Shown here in pieces: positions 16,448-50,586 of a stretch of DNA of 64,000 bases. Each line of letters starts with the position of its first letter. Within the stretch, counting starts at the first letter, position 1. A program made the translations under genes and the position numbers. The notes under the pieces are model-generated. The model made no database searches, was not told the origin of the DNA, and was given only the letters and a program-made list of their open reading frames with translations. This DNA is from Macrostomum lignano (Eukaryota), in contig NIVC01001338.1 of assembly GCA_002269645.1 (NCBI GenBank), positions 186,001-250,000 of the forward strand, written 5' to 3'.

Positions 16448-16948
16448 AGCAAAGAAATATCCAAGTGACTCAGGGACTCAGGGGTGACTGTGTTGTCTGT
16501 AAGGTACACTGTACACAGTACAGTACAGTTGATCCATGGTATCCTGTTCTTGTCGAGAAAGTTAAGCATTGGTGGCAAACAATTTTACTAGGTGGTGGCT
16601 ACGAGTGAAAATAGCTCGCTAGCACTGTCGGACGACCTAGCAACACACTGAGTTGGGAGTTAGATGTACTTTTCCATAGGAAAATCTAACTGAATAGAGT
16701 GCTTTCCCATGCTAGTGCAATCTGAGTCTAAAAATAGCACACAGACACAGCTAAAAGTCTATTTTTAGCACACATCGTCAGTAAACGTCATACAATGCAA
16801 GATTTATTTAAAGATGTTGTCGTTTGCACAAGGGAGGCTCAGAAACTGCACTACATATACTGAGTATGCAGGTGAGGCTAGTGAGGCCAAGATTCAGTCT
16901 GCTCTGCAACATTGAAGTGTAACTTTCAGAGAGGCTAATAAACTCAGT

Positions 16949-18514
16949 ATGGTGATCGAATACGACAGCTGCTTGGAAGCCGTGCTCAGCAATGTGCACT
17001 CCGGCTGCTCAGTCATGGTTGGCGGCTTCGGTCACTGCGGCTCGCCTGAAGGCCTGCTGGCTCAGGTGCTGCAGAGCGGCGCCGAAGGCCTGACGCTGAT
17101 CTCGGGCACTGGGGGCAGTCCGGACTCTGGGCTCGGCCGGCTCATATCAAGGCGTCGGGTGCAAAGTCTGCTCACCACCTACATTGGCGCCAACCGCGAG
17201 ATCTACCAGCGTCACCTGCTGGACCAGCTGGAGCTGCAGCTCCTGCCGCAGGGCACCTTCGCCGAGAGGATCCGGGCTGGCGGCTCCGGGCTGGCGGCCT
17301 TCTACACCCGCGCCGGCGTTGGCACCGCCATCGCAAACGGCGGCGTGCCGCTCCGATACGGACCCGACGGCGGCGTTCTGGAGGTCACCGCGGCAAAGGA
17401 GACGCGCCTGTTCGACGGGGTGGAGCACGTGCTCGAGACGGCGCTGAAAGCCGATGTCGCCCTGGTGAAGGCCTGGCGCGCCGACCGGGCCGGCAACCTG
17501 CAGTTCCGGATGTCGGCGAACAACTTCAACGGGATCATGTGCCAGGCGGCCCGGGTCGCCATCGCCGAGGTCGAAGAGATTGTCGACTGCGGACAGTTGC
17601 CAGCGGACCAGATCCACGTGCCCTCGGTGTTCGTGCAGGGCCTGGTGCTGGCGGAGAAGCAGCGGCCGGAGGCGAGGCGAGTGCTGAAGCGGGCGACCTC
17701 GCGCCAGCAGCAGCCGGCGTTGATGACCATCGCTCGCCGAGTCGCCGCCGAGTTCAAGGCTGACAGCTTCGCGAACGTCGGCCTGGGCATCCCGATGCTG
17801 GCCGCCAGCTGCGTGCCACGTGGCCTGAACGTCTTCCTGCACTCGGAGAACGGGGTGCTCGGCCTGGGCCCCTACCCCAGCTCGGAGGCGGACTTCGACC
17901 CGGACCTCATCAACGCCAGTCGGGAGAGCGTCACGCTTCGGCCCGGGGCGGTCTGCTTTGACTCGGCCACCAGCTTTGCCATTGTGAGCGGCGGCCATCT
18001 CAGCATGACTGTGCTGGGCGCTAATCAGGTAGAAATTCTCTAAAAATCTGGTTCATAATGTAATTGTTAGCATATGTTGCACGACGGCAGTGGCAGAATT
18101 GGCAACAACCTCATTTTATCTGAATTTCCCTTTCAGGTGTCGCAATTCGGCGACATCGCCAACTGGATCATCCCTGGCGCAGCCGCCGTCGGCATGGGCG
18201 GCGCCATGGAGCTGGTCAGCTGCGGCATCCGCGTGGTGGCCGCCATGCGCCACTGCACTGTGAATGGCCAGCCAAAAATCCTGTCCAGCTGCACCCTGCC
18301 ACTGACTGGCAGACGCTGCGTCGATCTCATAGTGACGGACCTGGCGGTGTTCTCCGTGGACAAGAACCGCGGCCTGACCCTGCTGGAGCTGGCGGACGGC
18401 GTAACAGTGAGCCAAGTGGCCGCCTGTACAGACTGCCATTTCGCAATCTCCGACTCTGTGCAACCCGTGAAGCAGGTGGTTGACTGCACTACTAGCGAGC
18501 TGGCACGAGTTTGA
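16949..18514 (+). CDS. OXCT1: Succinyl-CoA:3-ketoacid CoA transferase (SCOT/OXCT-type, fused A+B); join(16949..18028,18137..18514), 485 aa
   Basis: GGFGxCGxPE, QGTFAERIRAGG, KAWRADRAGN, catalytic SENG, GMGGAM motifs; intron CAG|GTAGAA...TTTCAG|GTG phase 0 restores GANQ-VSQFGDIANW. Confidence 0.93.
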
Positions 18515-19011: not shown

Positions 19012-20273
19012 CTTACTGCAGTAGACGAAAAGTGTACACCTGTACAGAAATAAATAAACCAAACACTGCAACGCTTTATTCGAATTTAGTTGTTAATAAC
19101 AAAACTGGATTTAAGATTGTTTTGGCCATAAAAAACCCGAACTGCCAAATTCCCGAGCACTGTCGTGTATTACATGCAGCATATACTACTGTTAATAGAA
19201 TGTGCAAACTCCGCGCATAAAAGATTAATTCAGGGCTCCAATACAGTTGCTTAAAAAATCCACGAAAATATGCTCTTCAAAAATAGCGGGAGAAAGAGAC
19301 AGGATATTAATATTATTGATAAAGCAACACCCCAGTATTGTGGGGTGTGAAAGCTTTTAATGGTGCTGCTGGGCATCAAACACTAAACAGCTTTGGCAGC
19401 GCGATATGCTTGCAATTATTGCACCAAAGGAATGGGGTGGAACGCTTGAAAACAGATAATATTATATATTATTAATAAACTGTCTGTCACGTGCAGCAAT
19501 TTTAAACAAGACAATAACAAAAATTCCGATTGCATCAAGATATGCAATTCGCACAGTTGTACTATTAATAATGATACTTGAACAGTAAAAATATGGAAGT
19601 GCAGATCCTGTTCAGCAGTTCCAATATAAAGCCACAACTTTGCCACCAAAACGAATTCCAAACGTATTAAGAAAAATACTCAAACATGAGTAAGCAAAAA
19701 ACATTTCTCTGACATAATAAAATCTTATCTTTCTCAATCTACAGTACATTCTACAATGTACATAGGATGACTCGTACATGTCATGTACATACATACAATT
19801 TAGCATATTCCTGACTGCCAAAGGAAAAATTTTCTAGCTTCGCATTGTACATTGTAGGAATCTCCTATGTACACAACAATATCTTCAAGTACATGGAGTA
19901 CATCTATTATTTTAACAATATAAATCAGTAGAAGGCATTGGTTCCACAAATTCTATCAGCATCAACACATTAAATACAGAGCTAGCGTAGGTAAAAATGC
20001 TGCAGTAAGTCATTTGATAATCAAAACTAATCAATTTTTCTGTCTGATCTACCTGCCTACCAACGTAGCTATAAACCTGCCTTCTAAACTACCTACAATC
20101 CTGCCTACCAAACTATTTATCTACTAACCAACCTACCTACCGACCTATCTACCAACCTACATGACCTACCTACCTGACCAACCTACCAACCAACCTACCA
20201 ACCTACCTACCTGATCAACCTGCCTACCTACCAACCTACCTGACCAACCCAACAACCTACCTACCTGACCAAC

Positions 20274-23200
20274 CTACCTACTACCAACCTTACCACCCAG
20301 GCCTTGAATCTCCCTCCTGCTGGTGGCGGCCAGGCCTCTAGTCCAGAACTTCAGCACCAGTTCGTCGTTACGCGAGCAGCCCAGGCTGTCGAGCAGTTCA
20401 GAGACCTGCGCATTGCTCAGCTGCTGCTGCTGAGCGCCTTGCACGTAGCAGCAGGTGAAAAACTGTCTTGCCCTGTTCAACCAGTCCTCCTTGACGTTGG
20501 TGACCAGCAGGTCCAGAGCTTCATCTGGAAGCTGCTGACTGTCCAGCAGTTTGTCCAGCTCGTCGATAAGTCCGGGCAGTCCCAGCAGGGAGTTGTAGGC
20601 GCTGCTGGGCACGGGGCAGTTGGTGGCGCAGCTCACGGTCAGGTCGTCAACAGAGGCAAAGGATTCGGCTGCCAGGCTGCGAAGGTCAGCGCGGCATTCC
20701 AGCACGAGCATCGGATGGCTGACGGGATCGGTGAGCACAATGTCCGGGATGACCGCCTCCCAGGCCAGGCCAAGGAAGTTGCACCTGCGGTTTGGAAATT
20801 GCAAATTTGTCAGTGACTGACAATGACTGAAAATGAGTCATTGACTGATGATCGATTGAAAATGAGTCATTGGCTGATGATCGATTGAAAATGAGTCATT
20901 GACTGATGATCGATTGAAAATGAGTCATTGGCTGATGATCGATTGAAAATGAGTCATTGACTGATGATCGATTGAAAATGAGTCATTGGCTGATGATCGA
21001 TTGAAAATGAGCCATTGACTGATGATCGATTGAAAATGAGTCATTGGCTGATGATCGATTGAAAATGAGTCATTGGCTGATGATCGATTGAAAATGAGTC
21101 ATTGGCTGATGATCGATTGAAAATGAGTCATTGGCTGATGACCGATTGAAAATGAGTCATTGGCTGATGATCGTTTGAAAATGAGTCATTGGCTGATGAT
21201 CGATTGAAAATGAGTCATTGGCTGATGATCGATTGAAAATGAGTCATTGGCTGATGACGATTGAAAATGAGTCATTGGCTGATGATCGATTGAAAATGAG
21301 TCATTGACTGATGATCGATTGAAAATGAGTCATTGGCTGATGATCGATTGAAAATGAGTCATTGACTGATGATCGATTGAAAATGAGTCATTGACTGATG
21401 ATCGATTGAAAATGAGTCATTGGCTGACGATCGATTGAAAATGAGTCATTGACTGATGATCGATTGAAAATGAGTCATTGGCTGATGATCGATTGAAAAT
21501 GAGTCATTGGCTGATGATCGATTGAAAATGAGTCATTGGCTGATGACCGATTGAAAATGAGTCATTGGCTGATGATCGATTGAAAATGAGTCATTGACTG
21601 ACGATGATCGATTGAAAATGAGTCATTGACTGACGATGATCGATTGAAAATGAGTTATTGGCTGATGATCGATTGAAAATGAGTCATTGACTGACGATGA
21701 TCGATTGAAAATGAGTCATTGAGGCGATTAAAGAGTAATCGATTGGTGACTATTGGTTGAAAATGAGTCATTGATTGATAGTGATTGGTTAAAAATAAGT
21801 TTTTGATTAGGATGATTGATTAAAGATGAGTCATTGATGGGTGATGATTGATTGAAAATGAAAATGAGTCATTGATTTGCGATGATTAGTTGGAAATGAG
21901 TCATTGATTTGCGATGATTAGTTGAAATGAGTCATTGATTTGCGATGATTAGTTGGAAATGAGTCATTGATTTGCGATGATTAGTTGAAAATGAGTCATT
22001 GACTTGCGATGATTAGTTGAAAATGAGTCATTGATTGGTGATGATTAGTTGAAATGAGTCATTGATTGGTGATGATTAGTTGGAAATGAGTCATTGATTT
22101 GCGATGATTAGTTGAAAATGAGTCATTGATTTGCGATGATTAGTTGGAAATGAGTCATTGATTTGCGATGATTAGTTGGAAATGAGTCATTGATTTGCGA
22201 TGATTAGTTGAAAATGAGTCATTGATTTGCGATGATTAGTTGAAAATGAGTCATTGATTTGCGATGATTAGTTGGGAATGAGTCATTGATTTGCGATGAT
22301 TAGTTGGAAATGAGTCATTGATTTGCGATGATTAGTTGAAAATGAGTCATTGATTTGCGATGATTAGTTGAAAATGAGTCATTGATTTGCGATGATTAGT
22401 TGGAAATGAGTCATTGATTTGCGATGATTAGTTGAAAATGAGTCATTGATTGGTGATGATTAGTTGAAAATGAGTCATTGATTTGCGATGATTAGTTGAA
22501 AATGAGTCATTGATTTGCGATGATTAGTTGGAAATGAGTCATTGATTTGCGATGATTAGTTGAAAATGAGTCATTGATTTGCGATGATTAGTTGAAAATG
22601 AGTCATTGATTTGCGATGATTAGTTGGAAATGAGTCATTGATTTGCGATGATTAGTTGAAAATGAGTCATTGATTGGTGATGATTAGTTGGAAATGAGTC
22701 ATTGATTTGCGATGATTAGTTGAAAATGAGTCATTGATTTGCGATGATTAGTTGAAAATGAGTCATTGATCGGTGATGATTGGTTGAAAATGAGTCATTG
22801 ATTTGCGATGATTAGTTGGAAATGAGTCATTGATTTGCGATGATTAGTTGAAAATGAGTCATTGATTTGCGATGATTAGTTGAAAATGAGTCATTGATTT
22901 GCGATGATTAGTTGAAAATGAGTCATTGATTGGTGATGATTGGTTGGAAATGAGTCATTGACTAATGAGGAATGAAAATGACATACCAGACTCACCTGTA
23001 AGGCTCTTCATACACGCTGGAATTCAGCACCTCTTGTACGCAGTTGTGCGGCAAAATCTGTCGCATCAGCTTGAAAAATGAGGCGGCCAGAGCGGGCAGG
23101 TTGGTGCGGAACACAATCTGATTGCCGGTGACCAGGTGGTACAGGAGGAGGAGGAAGATGTGCGGCTGTCTGTGCAGACTCAGCTGCGGCGAGTCCGGGT

Positions 23201-24932
23201 CCAGCACTGACACGGACCTGCGGGGAGATGGTGTAATAGGCTAGATTAGCAATCCGTTTTACAATAGTCAGGTTGGCTAGATTAGCAATCCATTTTAAAA
23301 TCATTAAGTTGACTAGATTAGCAATCCATTTTAAAATCGTCAAGTTGACTAGATTAGCAATCCATTTTAAAATCATTAAGTTGACTAGATTAGCAATCCA
23401 TTTTAAAATCGTCAAGTTGGCTAAATTAGCAATCCATTTTAAAATCGTCAAGTTGGCTAGATTAGCAATCCATTTTACAATCGTCAAGTTGGCTAGATTA
23501 GCAATCCACCAGTTCCTTTGCGCAATGCAGCTTAGCACATTGTACTCCATCATACCTGTCAATCAAGTTGGTAACAGGCACCCGTTTTAGCCGCTGCCTG
23601 ATGTGCCTGAGCGAGTGGAACACGATGCTGACCACCGCGTTACCGCCAGCGGGTTTGCAAACCGTGGGAGCGGTTGGAGTTGGCACCACCGTTCTGGTGC
23701 CCTCGTCCTCGGAATCCTGAGAAGGTTTGAGTAGACAGTAGATTTACAATTGTGCTTACGGTAGCTAAATGAAATTACACTATGACCTATGAGCGATTTT
23801 AAACTATGACCTATGAGCGATTTTAAACTATGACCTATGAGCGAATTTAAACTATGACCTATGAGCGATTTTACACTATGACCTATGAGCGAATTTAAAC
23901 CATGACTTATGAGCGAATTTTAACTATGGCCTACGAGCGAATTTAAATTATGACCTATGAGGAAAGTAAAACTATGACCTATGAGCAAATCTACATTATC
24001 ATTCATGAGTCTGCATAATCCATAACAATCTTGCAGCTAAACCATGACCACTGAAAAGCTCAACTATGACCCATGAGCACCTCGCTATCCAGCAGGCAGT
24101 CCTGATCAGCGGCCATCATCTGCAGTTCCTCCACCAGCTCGTCCTCAGTCGGCCGGCCCACCCGAATCTCCTCCCGTTGCCAGCCGCGCAGCATCCAGGA
24201 GAACCAGAGATGAAGCCGCTTGAACACGGCCGGGTCGCCGGTGAGCTGAGCCAATGACCTAGCTGGATTATCCGACCGGCGCATTCTCAACCAGCTCGAG
24301 CCGTTGATTCGAGTCGCCTTGGCGCTGCCCTGACGCAGCTGCTCAGCTTGAAACTGTGCAGTAGCCATCTGCTTCAATGCGCCGCTAATCCTGCCAATCT
24401 GAGCCACCAGCCAAGGCCAGGCCTGCAACAGCATGCGACTGTCGGTGGACATCACAACGACAGCGTATTGGCTAGTCAGACCCCGAGCCTTGGCATCGTC
24501 CAGTTGAAACGGCGAGCCCATCACGTGACCATTGACCGGGTCGCCAAAGTACATGGCGCTAGTTGGACAAACTTCGCAGGAGTGCACGCGAAGGCAGGCC
24601 TGACGGAGACGGCTGTACAACTGGCTAGGCCAGGTGGGGTGCTGACTGGAGACCAGGTGCACCCCGGCAGAGGCGTCCTCGGTGTGCATAGCCAGAATGT
24701 TTGGCGGCATGGATCGGCAGGAAGGGCAGGCGACAACTGGGAAGCACACGGATGCGGGCGGAGGCTGCTGCTGGGTCAACAGTGTCTCCTCGGCTCGGGC
24801 TGGGGATGGCGGAGTCGGCGCCACCTCCAGCAGTTGACGGGAGCTGCTGGGCAGCTGTTGCATGACCTGCATGCATAGCACTACTGAAGGACCGTGGTCC
24901 TCGCAGAAGTGTGTTAGCGCAATGAGACAGTT
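20274..24932 (-). CDS. FLCN: Folliculin; complement(join(20274..20784,22996..23217,23556..23716,24081..24932)); initiator Met not in the first identified exon
   Basis: N-terminal NCLIALTHFCEDHGP (human MNAIVALCHFCELHGP), FHSLRHIRQ, YHLVTGNQIV, YEEPYR|CNFLGL, LKFWTRGL; splice phases 0/2/2 consistent; 581 codons plus Met is close to the human length. Confidence 0.93.
20820..22962. repeat. Two-family minisatellite (29-bp then 32-bp units) filling folliculin intron 3; shared core GAAAATGAGTCATTG
   Basis: Units gaaaatgagtcattggctgatgatcgatt (20820-21720) and gaaaatgagtcattgatttgcgatgattagtt (21870-22960). Confidence 0.97.
23239..23507. repeat. 36-bp minisatellite (core GGCTAGATTAGCAATCCATT) in folliculin intron 2
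   Basis: About 7 tandem copies. Confidence 0.95.
23775..23990. repeat. ~25-bp minisatellite (AACTATGACCTATGAGCGATTTTAA) in folliculin intron 1
   Basis: Direct reading. Confidence 0.9.
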
Positions 24933-27134
24933 CTGAAAGATTTCGGATTGAGATTTAGAAATAATAAAAACCAATTAAGTGCTCCGGTTTTAAGTGCCAA
25001 TCAAATAGATATTATCAAGTTCTCAAGCTCACTCACTACTTGTCGTAGGGATAAGAAAGAGGGGGTGATGAAGTTGAGAGGAAGACAAGAAAATGATAGC
25101 CACAGGCACACCCTATAGACAGCGATGTAGGTGTGGTTAAGATAGAGGGGTAGGGTTGGACAATGGACAAGAAGATCAATAAAAACAGCACGCGCGATAA
25201 AAAGCAATAAAATGGGGAGGCCCGGCAAGGAGAAAGGGTAGGGTTGAGACTCGAGAGGAAGACCAGTTAACCCCACAGTAGCACAAAAAGTGGGGTTGGC
25301 TAAAATAGGAAAGAGGGTGTGGGTTGAGAGAGCAGATAAGTGAGTGGATCGATAACTACATCACGCGCAATAAAAAGCAATAGAATAGGGTTGGTCAGAA
25401 AAGAAGAAAGGGTTGAGACTAAAGAGGAAGCCAGATAATCGATAACCACAGCAAACATTGTAAAGTAGTAGCGTTAAAGTGAGGTTGGCTGGAATAGGAA
25501 AGTGGGTGAGTTGAGAGAGCCGATAAATGGATCGATAATGACATCACGCGATATAAAAATCAATAGAATAGGGTTGGCCAGACTATTGAGAGGGTTTGGT
25601 TGGCAGAGCCATATAATCGATCATCACAGCACACGCTATAAAACAGCAAAGATAAGCGTTGTCTGGAGTGGAAAGAAGGGGGCGGGGTCGAGAGGCAGAC
25701 CAAATAATCGATAACCATCCCACACGCTGGAGTTGACTGGAATAGGAAGGACAGGGTGGGGTGGGGTTCACAGCACGCGCTATAAAAATCAATAAAATGG
25801 GGTTGGCCGAAAAGGAACAGGAGGGTGGGGCTGAGAGGCCGACCCTATCGGTAATTATCAATAACAACAGGCCTACAGCAGCCCTATAAAAGCGACGAAG
25901 TGGGGTTGATTGTAATACAAAATACGGAATAGACCAGATCGATAAGTTAATATTTATGAATATTAGTACTTTGGATTGGACCAAACAAGCCCTATTTTAT
26001 AACAATATCAAGGAAATGCATACAAAAAACCAACACTGAATAATGACTAATTTGAAATAATACAGTAATTTTGCTTTCCAAGCTTTATACTACAACTAGT
26101 CCAATATATTTCGACCTATATTACAAAGCAGTAATAAATTAAGTGTTGTAGTCATATTCAGCTTTATTGAAGAACTTGATGAAGCACCATACTGACTTTA
26201 AAATAGTTAGATAATTCAAATCAGCTTGTGCGCAACTTGTAGTTTCAAAAAGTTGGTAAAAAAACAAAATATATTGGAGGACAGGCTTTGCATCAGAGAT
26301 CAATAAATTGATTATTATTATTGCAGTTAATAGGAGACTAATTGAGCAGCAGGCAGGTACTAATAACTAGTTAATTAGTTCACTATGCTGAAAATACACG
26401 CTGAACTAATCGAAAATATGTACAGAACAAATTTTGCTTATATTTTATCGTTTGCTGCTAGGGCTCAAAGAGATTACTAAGGTAATTAGCAGCTGGTGAG
26501 TCAAACGAAAACAGAGAGCCAAACTAAGAAGACAATTTACAAATAGATAGGCGTATGTAAAGCAAAAATAGGCCATAAAATACTTCACATACTACTGCGG
26601 TAGACAGGAAGCATTATTAATTAGGTAGTAAGGAAGATAATAGTAGACTTTGTAAAATTTGAATAAACAATAATAATGACTTTGTTTCATAAGTTGGGCA
26701 GCAAAAACGATTGCGATTATAAACAGAAGGCCATTGATGAGAAAAATAAATTATTATTAAAGTACATTTGTTAATTGCGTTGTCAAAATAAATACTAAGT
26801 AATAATATATACAGTACAACGGCATAAGCGGTACAACAAACAATACATATAGCAATAAAAAGCAGGGAAAAAGGAGTACGTTTTGTCCTACTAAAAAATA
26901 GCGCAAACAGACAAACAAAAATATTGTGGTTAAGGGTCTGACTGATAATTGCACAGTCTGACTAATGATTGTATTGCACTAACTATAAAATAAGTTTTTC
27001 TAACAACTATAAACCTCGTTTGAAAATAGTTTGGCAGCAGATAAACTAATACAACAAAATCGGGTATGATCTGTTTTGGAGTTGGAGTCACCTTTAAACT
27101 GCACAACACTCGTTTATCAGTCGCTTTTACTGTA

Positions 27135-28148
27135 GCTCATCCAGGTAAACCCCAATTACTGTAACTCATCAAGGTAAACCCCAATTACTGCAACTCATCA
27201 AGGTAAACCCCAATTACTGCAACTCATCCAGGTAAACCCCAATCACTGTAACTCATCCAGGTAAACCCCAATCACTGTAACTCATCCAGGTAAACCCCAA
27301 TCACTGTAACACATCCAGGTAAACCCCAATCACTGTAACACATCCAGGTAAACCCCAATCACTGTAACACATCCAGGTAAACCCCAATCACTGTAACACA
27401 TCCAGGTAAACCCCAATCACTGTAACACATCCAGGTAAACCCCAATCACTGTAACACATCCAGGTAAACCCCAATCACTGTAACACATCCAGGTAAACCC
27501 CAATCACTGTAACACATCCAGGTAAACCCCAATCACTGTAACACATCCAGGTAAACCCCAATTACTGTAACTCATCCAGGTAAACCCCAATCACTGTAAC
27601 ACATCCAGGTAAACCCCAATTACTGTAACTCATCCAGGTAAACCCCAATTACTGTAACTCATCCAGGTAAACCCCAATTACTGTAACTCATCCAGGTAAA
27701 CCCCAATTACTGTAGCTCATCCAGGTAGACTCCAATTACTGTAACTCATCCAGGTAAACCGCAATTACTGTAGCTCATCCAGGTAAACCCCAATTACTGT
27801 AACTCATCCAGGTAAACCCCAATTACTGTAGCTCATCCAGGTAAACCCTAATTACTGTAACTCATCCAGGTAAACCGCAATTACTGTAGCTCATCCAGGT
27901 AAACCCCAATTACTGTAGCTCATCCAGGTAGACTCCAATTACTGTAACTCATCCAGGTAAACCGCAATTACTGTAGCTCATCCAGGTAAACCCCAATTAC
28001 TGTAACTCATCCAGGTAAACCGCAATTACTGTAGCTCATCCAGGTAAACCCTAATTACTGTAACTCATCCAGGTAAACCGCAATTACTGTAGCTCATCCA
28101 GGTAAACCCCAATCACTGTAACTCATCCAGGTAAACCCCAATTACTGT
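27135..28148. repeat. 29-bp minisatellite (CTCATCCAGGTAAACCCCAATTACTGTAA), ~35 copies, between FoxN and FLCN
   Basis: Direct reading. Confidence 0.97.
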
Positions 28149-28319
28149 CAGCTATTCAAGACCGAATCAAACAAAAACTAATAATAATAGTATTATTACT
28201 ACCTGTGACGATCAGAACAGATAAACGTTTAAAAAGAAAGTAATAAAAAATTCAATGACTCTTTCTCATGCATTCGATCGGGGAAAACCAACGACTAGGT
28301 AAAACAAATAATATCTGAT

Positions 28320-31300
28320 TTAATTCAGGGGTTTACCGGCCAATTTCACTACAATGCCGCTGCCACCATTGGCGATGGAGAATCTGCCAGAGCCAGCGGC
28401 GGAAGCTGAGCGACTCGCTGATGACGTCACAATATGAACTCGAGAGCCAATCAGAGACGACGCAGCTGACGATTTAACGACAATAGGAGAAGCCACTACA
28501 GGTGGCTGCTTGGCGCTGTTGGCGGTGCCGATGGGCTCGCTGCTTGGCTGCGACTCCCTGGTGGCGCCGTTCAATGCCAGACTGGCCAGGACCGAGGCTT
28601 CCTCGATCGGGCTGCGGGTGCGAGCATTAGTGAGTAATAAGCTACTTTCGATACATATCGGCAGTGCAAAGCTGCTATAATAGCTTTTATTAATTTAACA
28701 TAATGGTAAAAGTAACTTTCGATACATATCGGCCCTTAAACTTTGTCTGTAGTAAAAATAAAGTTTCAATAAATATCGATTCTTCAATTTTGCGAAATAA
28801 TTTCGCATACATATCGGCAAATTTTTTACTATCAAGTGAGCTTCGTTTGTCATAAACGCTATGCTTTTTCGATACATATCGTTACAAAAGGTTAAAAAAT
28901 CGCTCACATTTTATCCCGCGTCTCGGCCAATCCGCCAACAGACAGAATAGGCGGCAGTCGTCGCGGCTGCACCGTCGCTTCGCCGGCAGCAGCGTCGGTT
29001 GTCGTTGTCGCCGCCGCAGACGCGTCGTCGCTACTCTGGCATCGATACTTCAAATAGAGCGCGCGAGCGTCGGGCAGCTTAGCTTTGGAAGAGGAAGACG
29101 ATTGAGCAGCGGCGTCGCTAGCCGGCTTGTCATTGGCGGCCTTGGCATTGTCACTAGTATCATTTGAGACAGTGGCAGCACTACTAATAGTAGCATTCGA
29201 AACGGCAGGTTTGGCTTCGGTAGCCGTGGCGGTGGCGGTGGCGGCCGTGGCGGCGGTGGCTGCCCGCTTCATCTGGGCCATCTGGGCGGCGGCGACCAGC
29301 TGATTGACGGACGGCATGCCCGACGATCGGCGCTTGCGCTTCTTTTTCTTCAGCAGGCGCGCGGGCGGCAGCAGGCGGTACATCTGGGCGCAGTCTTTGC
29401 GGGGCCGGCCGCGCGGCCGCTTGATTGGCTGCTCGATCTCTACGTAGCCGTCTTCGTCTTCATCGTCGTCTTCGTCTTCATCGACGTCGACGTCGACAAT
29501 GTCGCCACGTTGTCGGCGAAGTTCGCGCAAGCTGGTGGCATCTGAGCCGGCCAGCTGCTGACCGTCTGCGGCCTTTAGGATGATTGGTGGAAGACGAGTG
29601 AGCTAGATGTATCGCTAGATTAGTCTCTAGATGTATCGCTAGATTTGTCTCTAGATGTATCGCTAGATTAGTCTCTAGATGTATCGCTAGATTAGTCTCT
29701 AGATGTATCGCTAGATTAGTCTCTAGATGTATCGCTAGATTAGTCTCCAGTTGTATCGCTAGATTAGTCTCCAGTTGTATCGCTAGATTAGTCTCTAGAT
29801 GTATCGCTAGATTAGTCTCTAGACGTATCGCTAGATTTGTCTCTAGATGTATCATTAGATTTGTCTCTAGATGTATTGCTAGATTTGTCTCTAGATGTAT
29901 CGCTAGATTTGTCTCTAGATGTATCGCTAGATTTGTCTCTAGATGTACCGCTAGATTTGTTTTTAGATGTCTTTAGCAGCTCACCTGATCCCCAAGGATG
30001 TGCACCAGTCGTTTCATTTTCGCGGCCAGAAACGGGTAGAGATGCGCTGACGGCAGCAAGTCCTGCTTACGGCAGCGCTGGCGCTGCTTGCTCTTGTCCT
30101 CATCTGCCTCATCGAAGGTTTCCGACTTAATCGCAGGCTGCTGCTGTTGCTGCTGTTGCTGCTGCAGCGGCTGGGACTCCGAAGGCGAAGGCTGCTTTAA
30201 AGTCGGCGGCCCTTTGACAGGCGTCACGTGACCTTTGAAACTGTTCACATTGGGGTGATACTGCATTCTCTGCTGCTGCTGCTGCTGCTGGATATCAGAG
30301 ACGCTGGCGAGTTCGTCATCGCAGTTGCTACTGACATTGTCGTCCATTTTGACCATAGCGGAGCTGTGAGCTAGAAGAGCATTGGTGCCTAACACGCTGC
30401 TGTAACTGGAGCCTTGCTGCTGCTGCTGTTGCAGGGGCAGCGGCGACTTGGTTTCGCGTCTCATTCCACCGCCGCCAGTTTTGTACATGGTGCCGGTGGC
30501 GCTGAACATTTGCACCTGAGCGTAGGGATGGTAGGGGGTCTTCTTGAGCGCCTGCAGCATGCCAGCCCTGGCCATGGGGTCGATGGTCCACAGGGAGCCT
30601 TTGGCCGAAGTCTGTGGGCGAATTTATCATTATTATATTATATTCTTAATCCAAAAAATCCCCAAGACAGTACTCGTATGTGAAATCCAAAAAATCCCCA
30701 AAAAATGAAATATAAAATCCTAAAAATTCACATTATACAATATAAAATAATACAAATCCCGAAAATCCCCAATACAGAATATAAAATCTCAAAAGTCCCC
30801 AATGCGCAGAATATAAAATCCAAAAAATCCCTATAATACAAACAATATGAAATCCCAAAATCCCCAATGAACTGAATATGAAATCCCAAAAATTTCCTAT
30901 ATACAGAATATGAAATTTAAAAAATTCCCAATACACAATATGAAATTCCAAAATCCCCAATACAGAATATGAAATCCCAAAAATCCTCAATACACAGAAT
31001 ATGAAATCCCAAAAATCTCCAATACACAAAATATGAAATCCCAAAAATCGTCAATAAACAGAATATGAAATCCAAAAAATCCCTAACGAACAGGATATGA
31101 AATCCCAAAAATCTGCAATACACAGAATATGAAATCCCAAAAATCCCCAATACAGAATATGAATTATGAAATCTAAAAAAAATCCCCAATACACAGAATA
31201 TGAAATCCCAAAAATCCCCAATACAGAATATGAATTATGGTATCCCGAAAATCCCCAATACACAGAATTTGAAATCCCAAAAATCCCTAATACAGAGTAT

Positions 31301-31858
31301 GAATTCCACAAAGATCGCAAATAAAGACTGACATTCAAAAGACCCACAGTGCATGTAACAAAATGAAAGAATGAGTACACAATACACTACTTACATCCCG
31401 CTGCACTTTCGTAAAGCTCTTATTCAGAGACAAGTTATGTCTGACGGAATTTTTCCAGCCGTTCTGAGCCTGGCGGTAGAATGGGAACTTCTGCTCAATC
31501 CACTGGTAGATGCGGCGCACCGGTAGGCACTTGTTTGGCGCCGCCTCAAGCGCCATGAAGATGAGGCAGGAGAAAGAATAGGGCGGCTTCAGCAGCCGGT
31601 CTTTGTGCGGATCGTAGCCGCTGTGAAACCGGTTGCCGCAGCTGGCGAAGGTGGACTGGGGAAACGGTTCCTGGATCCAGAAGGGGAAGAGGGTGAGAAA
31701 AAACGGCTTTGAGAACTCGTAATAGTTATGGTTTTAACTACCGATTTGTTGCCTATTCATGAAACTTTCATAGATAGGTACGAGTAGATAGATGGATAGA
31801 AAGACAGACAGACAGACACTGACAGACACTGACAGACACTGACAGACAGACAGACACT

Positions 31859-31914
<56 letters not shown>

Positions 31915-31972
31915 CTAAGACAGACAGACAGGCAGACAGACAGACAGACAGACAGACAGACAGGCAGACAGG

Positions 31973-32006
<34 letters not shown>

Positions 32007-32582
32007 CTAAGACAGACAGACAGGCAGACAGGCAAACAGACAGACAGACAGACAGACAGACACTGACAGACAGACAGACAGACACTGACAGACAGACAGA
32101 CAGACAGACAAACAGAAAGACACTGACAGACAGACAGACAGAGACACTGACAGACAGATCATAAATTAATCAAAACGCACCTTCTTAACACTGGCCGCCC
32201 CGGCAGCCTCAGCGGCAGGCGGCTGGCCAGTCGCATCCGATTCGCCGAGCCCGGGATTCAGCAGATCCGGGGGCCGGTAGTTCACCAGCCAGTCCAAGTC
32301 GCCCAGCTCGCTGCCGCCGCCGCCCACAGACGGCGAGGCTCGCAGGCTGGCGAAGCAGCTGCGGCTCAGCGGGTCGGCAGCTCCGACAGCATCGTCGTCG
32401 ACGTCGTCAAGCGCCGAAGCTCCTGGCGCGTCGCGTAGCGCGTTGGACAGCGCGGCGGCTGGGTAGGAGGCGGCCAGGCTGTCGCTGAGTGCCAGACGCC
32501 TGGCCAGCAGCTCAGCTGAGGAATCGTCGGAATCGGCAGCCGACAAGGGCGGCGGACTGTCGTCGAGCATTAGGCGGCTCAT
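28320..32582 (-). CDS. FOXN3: Forkhead transcription factor FoxN2/3 (CHES1-like); complement(join(28320..28611,28908..29572,29985..30611,31395..31670,32181..32582)), ~753 aa
   Basis: [15 protein letters not shown]...[15 protein letters not shown]...KGSLWTIDP...[11 protein letters not shown] matches FoxN2/3; N-terminal DLDWL and C-terminal EEASVLASL motifs; splice phases 0/0/0/2 consistent. Confidence 0.9.
29602..29968. repeat. 24-bp minisatellite (TCTCTAGATGTATCGCTAGATTAG) in FoxN intron 3
   Basis: Direct reading. Confidence 0.95.
30645..31310. repeat. Degenerate ~31-bp minisatellite (AAAATCCCCAATACAGAATATGAAATCCC) in FoxN intron 2
   Basis: Direct reading. Confidence 0.9.
31795..32158. repeat. 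(CAGA)n microsatellite in FoxN intron 1
   Basis: Direct reading. Confidence 0.97.
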
Positions 32583-32699
32583 TGCTGATGCTGTGGACTT
32601 TGAATTCCTACTGTTGTTTGTCTCTAAGGGTAAAATAGCTTGCAAATTACTGGAATGGTCAGTATTAAACAGTGAATCCGTTTTATTAATATGTAAAAA

Positions 32700-38170: not shown

Positions 38171-38758
38171 TAAAATTAATTGCTTTGGTTTAACTTACTA
38201 CTTAGCTGAGAGTAGCTTACACGCAAATGTTGCAGAGTGGCCCATCTAGTTTTTATAATATCTGTGTTGCTAACTGACGCCAGAATTCCGGACTTCATCT
38301 ACAGTCCTAAAGAAGGCACAGGTAAAACAATTCTATCTCTATAGTTCATCTACTTGCGCATAATTACTCGTGCAGTTGCTTTAATTTGGCACCTGGCTAT
38401 ATACATTGTACGAGCTAGAGTTTTTTGTTGTGTCAAGATGCAATGGAGGGCAATGCACATAAAAAGTGAACTTACCCCAGGCACAGGTAATTCTCTCCGC
38501 ATAAATAGATTCAGTTAAAGACAACTTCGCAACTTCGACTCGACAAGTTCGAATGTCTTAAAAACGGAGTTGTTACCAAAAATAAATTATAATATCGTTG
38601 CAAACATATAAACTTATGAAGGTAGGAAGCCTTTTCATTTTTTCTGTAGCTCTTCTGGAAAACTGGGTTGAAGTTCGCTCTAACTCAGCTTAGACGTTCG
38701 AGTACTTGCTAAAATTGCATCTTATTTCTGAGAATAAATCGCTCACTTGTCGTTATCA

Positions 38759-39355
38759 ATGGATGTCCTGAAATGCGTCGTTGTCGGCGACTCAAACGTT
38801 GGCAAGACCAGCCTGATTATGACGTACGTACAGAGCGCATTCTACGAAAATTCAATACCGACAGTGTTTGACTCTCACATAGTCACGGTTAACCATGGTG
38901 AAGCCAACAAAAGCAGGCAGCTGGTTGTGTGCGACACCGCAGGCCAGGAGACCTACGACAGACTGCGACCGCTCAGTTATCCGGACACCCACGTCTTCCT
39001 GTTGTGCTTCTCCGTGAACAACTCGACAAGCTTGAGCAACGTAATAGAGAAATGGCACTGGGAGCTGAAGCATCACTCTCCCAACACGCCAATCATTCTT
39101 GTTGGAACCAAGTCAGATTTGCGAGCGTCTGCTCCAACTGACAAAGCAGTTTCTAGCGAGCGAGGCTGCCAGGTGGCTAGAGAAATCAAAGCCATAAAGT
39201 ACATAGAGTGCTCTGCGCGACATCAGGACGGACTGCATCGCCTCTTTGTTGAGGCCATCGCTGCGGCTGATATGCCCCGAGGCGACAACGGTCGTGCTGA
39301 TGGTGGCAACAGGAACTCTCTGAATGGTTTGAAGACTCTCTGCAGCGTTTTGTGA
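38759..39355 (+). CDS. Intronless atypical Rho-family (Rac-like) small GTPase, 198 aa, CAAX CSVL
   Basis: [40 protein letters not shown] motifs; first ATG at 38759; uninterrupted ORF. Confidence 0.9.
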   Translation: MDVLKCVVVGDSNVGKTSLIMTYVQSAFYENSIPTVFDSHIVTVNHGEANKSRQLVVCDTAGQETYDRLRPLSYPDTHVFLLCFSVNNSTSLSNVIEKWHWELKHHSPNTPIILVGTKSDLRASAPTDKAVSSERGCQVAREIKAIKYIECSARHQDGLHRLFVEAIAAADMPRGDNGRADGGNRNSLNGLKTLCSVL

Positions 39356-43186: not shown

Positions 43187-43882
<696 letters not shown>

Positions 43883-45419
43883 AAATTTGTGAATGGGTTT
43901 TCCTGTGAATGACGCCGATAGCCACAAAACTTATGCGTAACTTCCGATCTGATTGGAGTATGCCCTGCTTTTGTCAGTTCGTTCATTATTATAACTAACA
44001 GTTTGAATTCACGCCAAAATTCGGAAATCATTAAAATCTTATTTTCTTTTACAACGTTTTACTTCTTCATAGTTTTATCTAGCCTATAAAGTAATAAAGA
44101 GTAGAAGTCTATCCGAATATTGATTTCCAAGTTTGGCGCTAATTCAAATTTTTATAATAATTAACGAATGAGACGCGAACATATAGGTGCGTTTGTACAT
44201 GCCCGAGATCAACTGCATGTGATAGCACGTTCATTGCGTTGCCGCGCTTGTTCTTTTTTGCAAAGACTAAAACTCGTGATTATACTAATATTATTTATAA
44301 ATAGGATGTACCAACCGATCCTGGAGCAACTATATGAAACGTACATGTGTACATTGCACTGTACACGCAACGCGTAGCTCGCAACAATCGACGCTCCTCT
44401 GCAGACTGCGTATAAATAATTGCTTTTAAACTTTCAGTAAATTTTGTTATTTTTTATCGAATATCCCTGTTGAAAACAACATATAATTAGCACAACAATA
44501 CATTACGGACTCACTGAACTTACGATTATAAGTGCTCTCTCGAATAATGCTCACTACAAACAACTCAAACATCAGTTGACTTGGAACACTCTCATTGTTT
44601 TGTAGCACATGCCTTACTGTTCTTTTTTACTTTTCTAACCAGCTGCTTTTAGACTCGAATTTCATAAAATTGTGCACATGTGCATGCAGGTGATGCCACG
44701 GTGCAAATTTATTTTGTAGTTTGAGCTGTTTCTACTTGAAACAACAAGCAGACACCTACATGTAACTCTCAGTTAGTTTAGTCTGCAAAAATGTCACTCG
44801 ACATGACAAGCGATCAAGACAAAACATTAGAAAAAGCAAATTATCCGACTTGCCATATTTCTGCTAATGCTTATAAGCAATCCAGTTTTGAGAACAGAAG
44901 GAAGCTGAACACACACACGCCAATCTCCATCAAAAATCTATATTTATGTGACGTGCCCACCATGTGTCGCCAAGTAATTACAGTATGCCTAAAGGATTCA
45001 CATCGCTTCAACCAGAAAATTAACAATCAAATCTGAACAAAACGAAAACAAAATTAATCACATATGGGATTCCAATGCAGCGAGGCTTGGTTTTAATTGC
45101 AAACACAAATATTCAATATAAATATTAACCATAGAATACTATTGCATAATAATATAACAGTAATAATACTTAAGAAGCACAGCTGGGCAGTGTATTGCAA
45201 TATTTTTTTACTGTATGCAAAAAGCAAAACAAGCTGATTAGTACAAAATACAACACCGATTTTGATCAGCACGTGCCGAGGCACCACCAGGGCGCTAGGG
45301 GTTTCGTAGAATTTGAACTCGCATGAAATTGCATGATTAATAAATACGTTGGGCATAGATATGATTATGCTAATGACTGCGGGAGACCAGATGCAAATGA
45401 AATCACAAGGAAAGACGAA

Positions 45420-50514: not shown

Positions 50515-50586
50515 GCTCAGTGGCCGCTAGGGGGCTGAGGATTGATGAGATAAGATTGTTTGTTATTAAAGCTGCTTCTTCCGTTA

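What the first reader, a model, noticed from the sequence alone, without database searches (positions are those of the whole stretch)
24900..24975. Folliculin lacks its own start codon; a spliced-leader AUG may supply Met1
The exon begins after TCTTTCAG| with AAC TGT CTC ATT GCG (N-C-L-I-A), phase 0, aligning to residue 2 of folliculin (MNAIVALCHFC). The ORF-track 'M' upstream is a non-ATG codon. Adding only ATG gives 582 aa, close to the human length. Flatworm spliced leaders end in a conserved AUG, which is known to serve as initiator in some mRNAs. Inference: this conserved mTORC1/AMPK regulator would depend on SL trans-splicing to be translated. Only weak cis ATG|GT junctions (25714-25718, 26186-26190) were seen upstream.
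Basis: partly seen in the sequence, partly recalled or inferred. Interest (0 to 1): 0.8.

Follow-up and report, generated by a model that had tools for sequence, protein, structure and literature searches.

The report
Folliculin start codon supplied by trans-splicing
In the flatworm Macrostomum lignano the folliculin gene has no start codon of its own and almost certainly gets one from the AUG at the end of the spliced leader; this mechanism is already known in flatworms, so this is a clean new example rather than a new principle.

Summary
On the minus strand the first folliculin (FLCN) coding exon starts at 24932 (AAC TGT CTC ATT GCG), directly after TCTTTCAG. Its first residue aligns with residue 2 of human FLCN. 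There is no in-frame ATG upstream, and an in-frame TAA lies 15 codons up.

The window is Macrostomum lignano (assembly Mlig_3_7, NIVC01001338.1). Its published 35-nt spliced leader (SL) ends in ATG. GenBank already holds this gene as a 5'-partial CDS of 581 aa (PAA69252.1, BOX15_Mlig027378g2) that starts exactly at 24932. The upstream same-strand forkhead gene is BOX15_Mlig027378g1. The two therefore share one transcriptional unit, of the kind the annotators cut using SL-read and poly(A) signals.

Three near-identical copies and an old paralogue (dS about 1.35) all have AG|AAC TG(T/C) and no genomic ATG. Codons 2-21 are under strong purifying selection (dN/dS about 0.05). The two upstream ATG|GT sites are weak and no more frequent than chance.

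SL-AUG initiation has been known in flatworms since Cheng et al. 2006, so this is a new member of a known kind and of modest interest.

The parts
24933..24940 (-). 3' splice acceptor TCTTTCAG, inferred to be the SL trans-splice acceptor. Its last six bases, TTTCAG, fit the [T/C]TNCAG motif reported to be enriched at M. lignano trans-splice sites.
   Evidence: Sequence. Motif from PMC8629364. Identical in the three near-identical copies.
24081..24932 (-). FLCN coding exon 1: 284 codons in phase 0, starting at codon 2 (AAC = Asn). Donor is GAG|GTGCTC.
   Evidence: The GenBank CDS of PAA69252.1 begins at 24932.
23556..23716 (-). FLCN exon 2
   Evidence: The spliced product is identical to PAA69252.1.
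22996..23217 (-). FLCN exon 3
20274..20784 (-). FLCN exon 4 with the TAG stop (GenBank model). UniProt models instead splice after 20289 to a terminal exon.
19982..19999 (-). Alternative terminal mini-exon, ctgcag|CAT TTT TAC CTA CGC TAG (HFYLR*), used in UniProt models A0A1I8IEM2 and A0A1I8HNV0.
24975..24977 (-). In-frame TAA 15 codons upstream of codon 2. It closes the frame, and no ATG lies between it and the exon.
24874..24876 (-). First AUG downstream of the junction. It is out of frame with FLCN and opens an 83-codon ORF.
24870..24872 (-). First in-frame internal AUG (codon 22). It is not conserved in the paralogue, which has ACC at this position.
24933..28319 (-). Outron or intercistronic region between the forkhead stop codon and the FLCN acceptor (3,387 nt). 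It holds a 29-bp x 35 minisatellite (27127-28148) and about five degenerate ~180-bp repeat units (25170-25840).
25714..25718 (-). ATG|GT site with a weak donor (GTTATC, 3 of 6 matches to GTRAGT), lying inside the degenerate repeat. Rejected as a cis start exon.
26186..26190 (-). ATG|GT site with a weak donor (GTGCTT, 4 of 6 matches). Rejected as a cis start exon.
28320..32642 (-). Upstream same-strand forkhead gene, PAA69253.1 BOX15_Mlig027378g1 (773 aa). It carries the same transcriptional-unit name as FLCN (g2). Exons: 32642-32181, 31670-31395, 30611-29985, 29572-28908, 28611-28320.
   Evidence: the reconstructed protein is an exact match in the collection.

Best explanation
The window is Macrostomum lignano, and the gene is a folliculin (FLCN) orthologue. 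The proposed mechanism has five steps.

1. Its pre-mRNA is made either as part of a forkhead-FLCN transcriptional unit or from a promoter of its own with a long outron. Which of the two applies is inferred, not shown.
2. The 35-nt SL (...UUAUUGCAUG) is trans-spliced onto the acceptor at 24933-24940, so the mature mRNA reads ...GCAUG|AAC UGU CUC AUU GCG. This is inferred from the annotation. No junction read was seen.
3. The SL's terminal AUG is then in frame and directly adjacent to codon 2, giving MNCLIALTHFCEDHGP..., a 582-aa protein colinear with human FLCN from Met1. The frame and the alignment are shown.
4. Without the SL there is no way to make the conserved N-terminus. The genomic frame is closed by TAA 15 codons upstream, and the first AUG after the junction is out of frame. 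This is shown.
5. That ribosomes really start at the SL AUG is inferred, by analogy with Schistosoma (Cheng et al. 2006).
For: - Organism and SL: searches identify Mlig_3_7. PMC8629364 gives an SL ending in ATG and reports about 30% of genes as trans-spliced.
- Annotation: GenBank PAA69252.1 is marked 'partial', is 581 aa long, and its CDS is 20274-24932, so it begins at the first base after the AG. Two further copies begin identically.
- Same unit as the upstream gene: forkhead is Mlig027378g1 or g4, and FLCN is Mlig027378g2 or g5. Wudarski et al. cut such units into genes with SL-read and poly(A) peaks.
- Where the transcript model starts: this pipeline starts the forkhead CDS right after an in-frame stop in L002. 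The FLCN CDS starts 42 nt downstream of its in-frame TAA, so the transcript model itself must start at the acceptor.
- Paralogue B (60% aa identity, exon-1 dS 1.35) has ctctcag|AAC TGC CTA GTG GCG. An in-frame TAA lies 4 codons upstream with no ATG, and its models are also 'partial'.
- Codons 2-21 show dN 0.068 against dS 1.46, so they are translated in both paralogues.
- Exon residue 1 aligns with residue 2 of human FLCN and of 27 other representatives.
- The SL AUG is in frame. The next AUG is out of frame, and the internal in-frame Met is not conserved.
- Neighbouring genes (OXCT, Josephin, Branch/Xylo) all have their own ATG, so FLCN is a specific case and not an annotation habit.
Against: - No SL-containing read, cDNA or contig spanning the junction could be reached.
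- Two of the six annotated loci start 6 and 9 nt downstream of the AG, so model 5' ends are not always exactly at the acceptor.
- The SL AUG sits in a poor Kozak context (U at -3, A at +4), so some leaky scanning is possible.
- The forkhead-FLCN gap of 3.4 kb is long for an operon. The published threshold is 1 kb after subtracting repeats. I identified only about 1.0 kb of clear tandem repeat plus about 0.7 kb of degenerate repeat.
Confidence: 0.85

Rival explanations
1. A small, unannotated cis exon ending in ATG lies upstream and is spliced to 24932, so the start codon is genomic.
For: The acceptor sequence alone cannot tell cis-splicing from trans-splicing. Two ATG|GT sites exist upstream, at 25718 and 26190.
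Against: - Both donors are weak (3/6 and 4/6 matches to GTRAGT, against the GT[G/A]AG consensus of the species), and one lies inside a degenerate repeat.
- Two sites in 3,387 nt is about the chance expectation.
- No upstream exon appears in any of six RNA-seq-guided gene models.
- The upstream regions of paralogues A and B share no conserved block.
- The paralogue-B candidates are all weak except one, which is absent from the sister copy.
- The next upstream gene belongs to the same transcriptional unit.
Confidence: 0.05
2. Translation starts at an internal AUG (codon 22 or 25), and the first 20 codons are 5' UTR that only resembles the FLCN N-terminus.
For: In-frame ATGs exist at 24872 and 24863. 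One UniProt model is N-terminally truncated.
Against: - Codons 2-21 have dN/dS of about 0.05 between paralogues whose synonymous sites are near saturation.
- These codons align residue for residue with human FLCN 2-21.
- Codon 22 is ACC in the paralogue.
- An out-of-frame AUG at 24876 precedes the internal Met.
- With the SL attached, an in-frame AUG lies upstream in any case.
Confidence: 0.03
3. Non-AUG initiation occurs on an RNA that has not been trans-spliced, for example at the TTG at 24974.
For: The ORF is open for 14 codons upstream and begins with TTG.
Against: - In paralogue B only three codons (CCC TCT CAG) separate the in-frame TAA from codon 2, and none is a near-cognate start.
- The upstream extension is not conserved between the paralogues.
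- The region is polypyrimidine and AG acceptor sequence.
Confidence: 0.02
4. The locus is a pseudogene or an assembly artefact that has lost its first codon.
For: GenBank flags the CDS as 'partial'.
Against: - Six loci on six contigs carry intact ORFs of 544-581 aa with both Folliculin domains.
- Purifying selection is strong.
- The window is identical to the public contig over the overlap checked.
Confidence: 0.01

Closest known systems
SL-AUG-initiated mRNAs of flatworms (Cheng, Cohen, Ndegwa & Davis 2006, J Biol Chem 281:733; called 'slORFs' in PMC9851317)
   Same: The SL ends in AUG. The acceptor lies in phase directly before the second codon of a conserved protein. No genomic initiator exists, so the N-terminus matches orthologues only if the SL AUG is used. 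This is the criterion used for Schistosoma and Echinococcus.
   Different: This case is in Macrostomum lignano, a free-living macrostomorph. None of the papers I retrieved reports SL-AUG use in this species. The gene is FLCN. The state is kept in two old paralogues, whereas Schistosoma mansoni FLCN has its own ATG. Translation from the SL AUG is not demonstrated here.
Human and other metazoan folliculin (FLCN; PDB 6ULG, 6NZD)
   Same: The protein is colinear from residue 2. It has the Folliculin N-terminal (longin-type) domain and the Folliculin_C domain, and is 582 aa against 579 in human.
   Different: Met1 is not encoded in the gene. The region between residues 25 and 90 is divergent and low in complexity.
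Downstream genes of M. lignano operons or transcriptional units (Wudarski 2017; Ustyantsev & Berezikov 2021)
   Same: There is a same-strand upstream gene with the same transcriptional-unit name (g1 and g2). The 5' end lies at an AG acceptor, and the spacer is rich in repeats.
   Different: The CDS-to-CDS spacer is 3.4 kb. I could not show that it falls under the 1-kb repeat-adjusted threshold used to call operons.

Membership tests
Folliculin (FLCN) protein family | N-terminal Folliculin domain (Pfam PF11704) | tested here: met
   E 1.3e-39, 136 bits against a cut-off of 23.3, covering residues 92-250 of exon 1.
Folliculin (FLCN) protein family | C-terminal Folliculin_C (DENN-like) domain (PF16692) | tested here: met
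   A precomputed Pfam hit is listed for the 581-aa product. My spliced model is identical to that product.
Folliculin (FLCN) protein family | Colinear alignment with an experimentally characterised FLCN from the N-terminus | tested here: met
   Exon residues 1-272 align to human FLCN residues 2-289, E 1.9e-36.
Flatworm mRNAs that use the SL 3'-terminal AUG as initiator | The organism's SL ends in AUG | tested here: met
   The window is M. lignano. The published SL is ...TTATTGCATG (PMC8629364). No SL RNA gene lies in the window, so this rests on the literature.
Flatworm mRNAs that use the SL 3'-terminal AUG as initiator | The mRNA is SL trans-spliced at this acceptor | tested here: inconclusive
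   The evidence is indirect only. The GenBank CDS and transcript model start at the AG| in 4 of 6 loci. FLCN is g2 of a transcriptional unit that was cut using SL and poly(A) signals. No junction read could be reached.
Flatworm mRNAs that use the SL 3'-terminal AUG as initiator | The SL AUG is in frame with the main ORF, with no stop between them | tested here: met
   SL plus exon 1 gives AUG|AAC UGU..., reading MNCLIALTHFCE....
Flatworm mRNAs that use the SL 3'-terminal AUG as initiator | No genomic AUG can yield the conserved N-terminus, so the SL AUG is required | tested here: met
   An in-frame TAA lies 15 codons upstream with no ATG. The next AUG is out of frame. Exon residue 1 aligns with orthologue residue 2. 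Codons 2-21 are under purifying selection.
Flatworm mRNAs that use the SL 3'-terminal AUG as initiator | Initiation at the SL AUG demonstrated in vivo | not testable with these tools
   This needs ribosome profiling, a reporter assay or N-terminal proteomics.
M. lignano operon (polycistronic unit), downstream gene | Same strand and same annotated transcriptional unit as the upstream gene | tested here: met
   Forkhead is BOX15_Mlig027378g1 and FLCN is BOX15_Mlig027378g2 on this contig. On NIVC01000440 they are g4 and g5.
M. lignano operon (polycistronic unit), downstream gene | Repeat-adjusted intergenic distance of 1 kb or less (Ustyantsev & Berezikov 2021) | tested here: inconclusive
   The distance is 3,387 nt from CDS to CDS. 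About 1.0 kb is a 29-bp array and about 0.7 kb is degenerate repeat. The length of the forkhead 3' UTR is unknown.

The most novel reading that the evidence does not exclude
Making FLCN protein strictly dependent on SL trans-splicing may be a selected regulatory device rather than a neutral accident. On this reading, both old M. lignano paralogues keep the ATG-less junction so that output of this mTORC1/AMPK-pathway regulator follows the activity of the trans-splicing and SL-specific cap-dependent translation machinery, for example during feeding, starvation or neoblast proliferation. Schistosoma, which has its own ATG, would lack this coupling.
Probability: 0.07. Interest if true: 0.6.

Novelty: new member of a known kind. 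Interest (0 to 1): 0.3.

Why it matters
This case shows, for a conserved growth-control gene, that a flatworm gene can be complete even though its genomic CDS has no start codon. That has three practical consequences.

- Annotation: GenBank calls the protein 'partial' and one UniProt model is truncated, yet the true product is very probably M plus 581 aa.
- Experiments: transgenic or knock-in FLCN constructs in M. lignano must supply an ATG or keep the trans-splice acceptor.
- Taxonomic range: the evidence extends SL-AUG initiation from parasitic flatworms (Neodermata) to a basal free-living flatworm.

It also gives a small evolutionary data point. The ATG-less junction has persisted in two paralogues with dS above 1, while Schistosoma keeps a genomic ATG.

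Tried and rejected
- Homologue search with exon 1 returned nothing, although the protein is in the collection. This is a limit of the word index, not biology.
I therefore could not search Logan or ENA transcript contigs for an SL-FLCN junction. The M+581 sequence is not in the protein collection.
- Rfam and tRNA scans of the window found nothing. No SL RNA gene or SL-like sequence lies in the window at up to 3 mismatches.
- Searches for Mlig027378 or FLCN in the main text of papers and in the supplements of three M. lignano papers gave no trans-splicing flag for this gene. FLCN appears only in GO-term gene lists of the 2016 eLife paper.
- Cheng et al. 2006 is not held, so it is cited through papers that summarise it.
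- Comparing the three near-identical copies was uninformative for finding constrained upstream elements, because they are about 98% identical throughout.
- My first two attempts to rebuild the forkhead gene model failed or timed out. A search constrained on L002 succeeded.
- Rejected readings: a cis start exon, an internal-Met start, a non-AUG start, and a pseudogene (see the rival explanations).
Full report
**1. What is in the sequence**

The feature lies on the minus strand. Read 5'->3', the region is ...ttaattggtttttattatttctaaatctcaatccgaaatctttcag|AAC TGT CTC ATT GCG CTA ACA CAC TTC TGC GAG GAC CAC GGT CCT, with the A of AAC at window position 24932. The mechanical ORF that covers it (24060..24974) starts at a TTG. 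The codon before that TTG is TAA (24977-24975). There is therefore no in-frame ATG upstream of the exon.

Exon 1 (24932-24081, 284 codons) matches Pfam Folliculin PF11704 at E 1.3e-39. It aligns with human folliculin (PDB 6ULG chain L, 6NZD chain H) at E 1.9e-36, with exon residue 1 (Asn) opposite human residue 2. A full HMMER scan of 1.84 billion representatives found 490 relatives. In 27 of the 150 listed, exon residue 1 again aligns to their residue 2, which means they begin M-N/D/E-A-[IV]-[IV]-x-L-C-H-F-C-E.

Four exons (24932-24081, 23716-23556, 23217-22996, 20784-20274) give a 581-aa product, or 582 with an added Met. Their donors are GTTATC and GTGCTT, neither of which resembles the species' GT[G/A]AG consensus. 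Two sites in that length is about the chance expectation.

**2. Whose genome it is**

The convergent neighbour at 16949-18514 (+) is a succinyl-CoA:3-ketoacid CoA-transferase. It is 100% identical to BOX15_Mlig014012g1 of Macrostomum lignano. The contig that carries it, GCA_002269645.1 NIVC01001338.1 (assembly Mlig_3_7), is identical to the window over the 21.6 kb fetched. Window position equals locus L001 position plus 6948.

M. lignano is a free-living flatworm. Its single published spliced leader is the 35-mer CGGTCTCTTACTGCGAAGACTCAATTTATTGCATG, which ends in ATG. About 30% of its genes are reported as SL trans-spliced, and about 15% lie in operons (PMC8629364). All reported flatworm SLs end in AUG (PMC12582326).

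**3. What the public annotation says**

On that contig a gene is called at exactly 20274-24932 (-), with a 581-residue product carrying Folliculin and Folliculin_C. My spliced model is that protein letter for letter: GenBank PAA69252.1, 'hypothetical protein BOX15_Mlig027378g2, partial'. It begins with N, not M. The same sequence with a leading M is not in the collection.

The annotation was built from RNA-seq. Genome-guided 'transcriptional units' were cut into genes by the TBONE pipeline, using peaks of SL-containing reads and poly(A) reads. ORFs were then called with TransDecoder (PMC5730564).

I rebuilt the upstream same-strand forkhead gene, and both reconstructions are exact GenBank matches. 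The window copy is PAA69253.1, BOX15_Mlig027378g1. The copy on NIVC01000440 is PAA82964.1, g4, and the FLCN next to it is g5. Forkhead and FLCN share no sequence, so a shared name prefix means they came from one transcriptional unit that was cut between them.

The position of the cut can be inferred. In L002 the same pipeline starts the forkhead CDS directly after an in-frame TAA. The FLCN CDS instead starts 42 nt downstream of its in-frame TAA, exactly at the AG| boundary. The transcript model itself must therefore start at 24932. This is what is expected of an SL-read peak, and not of a ragged assembly end. It is inference from the annotation. I did not see the reads.

**4. Replication within the genome**

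Two further contigs carry copies about 98% identical over more than 4 kb upstream, with the same junction (L002, L003). These are too similar to be informative about constraint.

A second paralogue group is more useful (PAA74221.1, PAA61881.1, PAA63135.1; loci L004-L006). It is 60% identical in protein, and its exon-1 divergence from group A is dS 1.35, dN 0.35. It also has a forkhead gene upstream on the same strand.

- Its first exon reads ...cccctaaccctctcag|AAC TGC CTA GTG GCG CTG ACC CAC TTC TGC GAG.
- An in-frame TAA lies only four codons upstream, with no ATG.
- All three GenBank models are 'partial'. One begins exactly at the AG|. The other two begin 6 and 9 nt downstream, which shows that model ends are not always exact.

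The upstream sequences of groups A and B share nothing alignable except the last 7 nt plus the exon. No upstream exon is conserved, while the AG|AAC TG(T/C) junction is.

**5. Are the first codons translated?**

Between the paralogues, 10 of codons 2-22 are identical, 8 differ synonymously and 3 differ non-synonymously (I/V, L/M, M/T). For codons 2-21, dN is 0.068 and dS is 1.46, a ratio of about 0.05. This is much tighter than the whole exon, where the ratio is 0.26. These codons are therefore read as protein in both genes.

The first in-frame internal Met (codon 22, 24872-24870) is ACC in the paralogue. It is preceded by an out-of-frame AUG at 24876-24874 that opens an 83-codon ORF. An initiator must therefore come from upstream of the acceptor.

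With the SL attached, the mRNA reads ...UUAUUGCAUG|AACUGU..., the SL AUG is in frame, and the product is MNCLIALTHFCEDHGP....

**6. Mechanism, with status of each step**

- Shown: the gene lacks a genomic initiator, its frame is closed upstream, its first codon is orthologous to codon 2, codons 2-21 are under purifying selection, and the published SL would supply an in-frame AUG.
- Inferred from the annotation and literature: the acceptor at 24933-24940 is a trans-splice acceptor. Its TTTCAG fits the [T/C]TNCAG motif reported at M. lignano trans-splice sites.
- Inferred by analogy: ribosomes start at the SL AUG. In Schistosoma mansoni the SL AUG is in frame in 28% of trans-spliced mRNAs, and more than 40 cDNAs need it (Cheng et al. 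2006, as summarised in PMC9851317). In Echinococcus granulosus 143 of 187 SL-bearing clusters are full-length only with the SL ATG, and SL-AUG use is conserved among neodermatans (PMC3510090).
- Open: whether FLCN is a true downstream operon gene of forkhead. The 3.4-kb spacer holds a 1.0-kb 29-bp minisatellite and about 0.7 kb of degenerate repeat. The published operon threshold is 1 kb after subtracting repeats.
- A caveat: the SL AUG context is weak (U at -3, A at +4).

I put the overall explanation at 0.85.

**7. Rivals**

- A hidden cis exon ending in ATG (0.05). It is disfavoured by the weak, chance-level ATG|GT sites, by six RNA-seq-guided models without such an exon, by the lack of conserved upstream sequence, and by the shared transcriptional unit.
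- An internal-Met start (0.03). The selection pattern and the non-conserved Met contradict it.
- Non-AUG initiation at the upstream TTG (0.02). It is impossible in paralogue B, where only CCC TCT CAG separate the stop from codon 2.
- A pseudogene or assembly artefact (0.01). Six intact, constrained loci exclude it.

**8. Comparison with other flatworms**

The Schistosoma mansoni orthologue (UniProt A0A3Q0KTE0) begins MDAIVVLCHFCEQHGP. In its genome the first coding exon starts at ttttcag|ATCACGATTATTAGATGGCGTGAAAAGAACT ATG GAT GCC..., so a genomic ATG lies 31 nt downstream of an acceptor. Other long FLCN homologues from unnamed sources (P0137 from MetaClust, P0139 from Logan), whose sequences resemble the schistosome protein, also start MNA[IV]VV....

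Dependence on the SL AUG for FLCN is therefore not shared with Schistosoma mansoni, the one other flatworm whose genomic locus I examined. It is a state of the Macrostomum lineage that arose before the A/B duplication, or arose twice. Neighbouring M. lignano genes (OXCT, Josephin, Branch/Xylo) have ordinary ATG starts, so FLCN is a specific case.

**9. Novelty and verdict**

The kind of mechanism has been known for twenty years, the SL of this species is published, and the gene model is already in GenBank, labelled 'partial'. Two things appear to be unreported in the literature I could search. One is that M. lignano FLCN, in both paralogues, is one of the genes that need the SL AUG. The other is that this extends the phenomenon to a macrostomorph.

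I rate it a new member of a known kind, with interest 0.3. It is a correct and neatly supported reading with practical value for annotation and transgene design, but it would not surprise a specialist.

The most novel reading not excluded is that the dependence is a selected coupling of FLCN output to trans-splicing or SL-specific translation. I give that about 0.07.

Noticed in passing
window 32640-32651 (-); L002 1592-1606: The forkhead gene upstream of FLCN is also annotated 5'-partial. Its model begins 7 nt (window) or 3 nt (L002) after a ccag| acceptor that is followed by TAA. If the SL is spliced there, its AUG would be followed at once by UAA, an AUG-stop mini-ORF. That would be the opposite outcome to FLCN. 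Trans-splicing at this site was not verified.
   Followed up: partly
window 16918-16951 (+): The OXCT gene has an acceptor-like aactttcag 19 nt before its ATG at 16949. An SL joined there would give AUG AGA GGC UAA, a 3-codon uORF. This is a hypothetical trans-splice site and was not checked.
   Followed up: no
window 19982-20290 (-): Two 3' ends exist for FLCN in public models. GenBank reads through to TAG at 20274 (...GGKVGSR*). UniProt models A0A1I8IEM2 and A0A1I8HNV0 end ...GGKHFYLR*. This fits a donor AAG|GTTGGT after 20289 and an acceptor ctgcag| before 19999, with an intron made mostly of (ACCT)n. Which end is used is unknown.
   Followed up: partly
window 20127-20290, 21551-22961, 23239-23508, 23771-23990, 27127-28148: Each FLCN intron and the upstream spacer is largely filled by its own minisatellite: 24-bp x 9, 36-bp x 7.5, 32-bp x 38, 29-bp x 35, and (ACCT)n at the 3' end. 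Together with the degenerate ~180-bp units at 25170-25840, repeats make up most of the non-coding sequence of this locus.
   Followed up: partly
L002, L003 (group A); L004-L006 (group B): The forkhead-to-FLCN arrangement is present three times at about 98% identity and three more times as an old paralogous segment (FLCN dS about 1.35). Downstream, group A has a convergent OXCT gene and group B has a Josephin gene. This is consistent with the known hidden polyploidy of M. lignano.
   Followed up: partly
L007 3001-64836 (Schistosoma mansoni NW_017385993.1): RefSeq model XP_018645191.1 (863 aa, named 'eukaryotic translation initiation factor, putative') fuses an eIF3g N-terminal segment to FLCN through the acceptor 31 nt upstream of the FLCN ATG. 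It is probably a chimeric model of two adjacent genes. The newer UniProt model starts at MDAIVV.
   Followed up: partly
(tool behaviour): The word-indexed homologue search returned no hit for FLCN exon 1, although the identical 581-aa protein and three cluster mates are in the same collection. A negative result from that tool is not evidence of absence.
   Followed up: yes
window 38738-39352 (+), 43187-43930 (+), 48661-50526 (-), 53570-57303 (-): Other genes in the window, by Pfam on ORF segments: two Ras-superfamily small GTPases (by eye Rho/Rac-like), both with their own ATG (MDVLKCVVVGD..., [12 protein letters not shown]...); a cyclin-domain gene whose likely first exon begins MGNGLSCC (by eye; that segment has no Pfam hit); and a UCH-type ubiquitin hydrolase. 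None was examined for trans-splicing.
   Followed up: partly
PMC5173321, supplementary file 3: The M. lignano FLCN homologue is listed within GO-term gene sets of the 2016 neoblast and germline transcriptome study. I did not establish which expression class the list belongs to.
   Followed up: no
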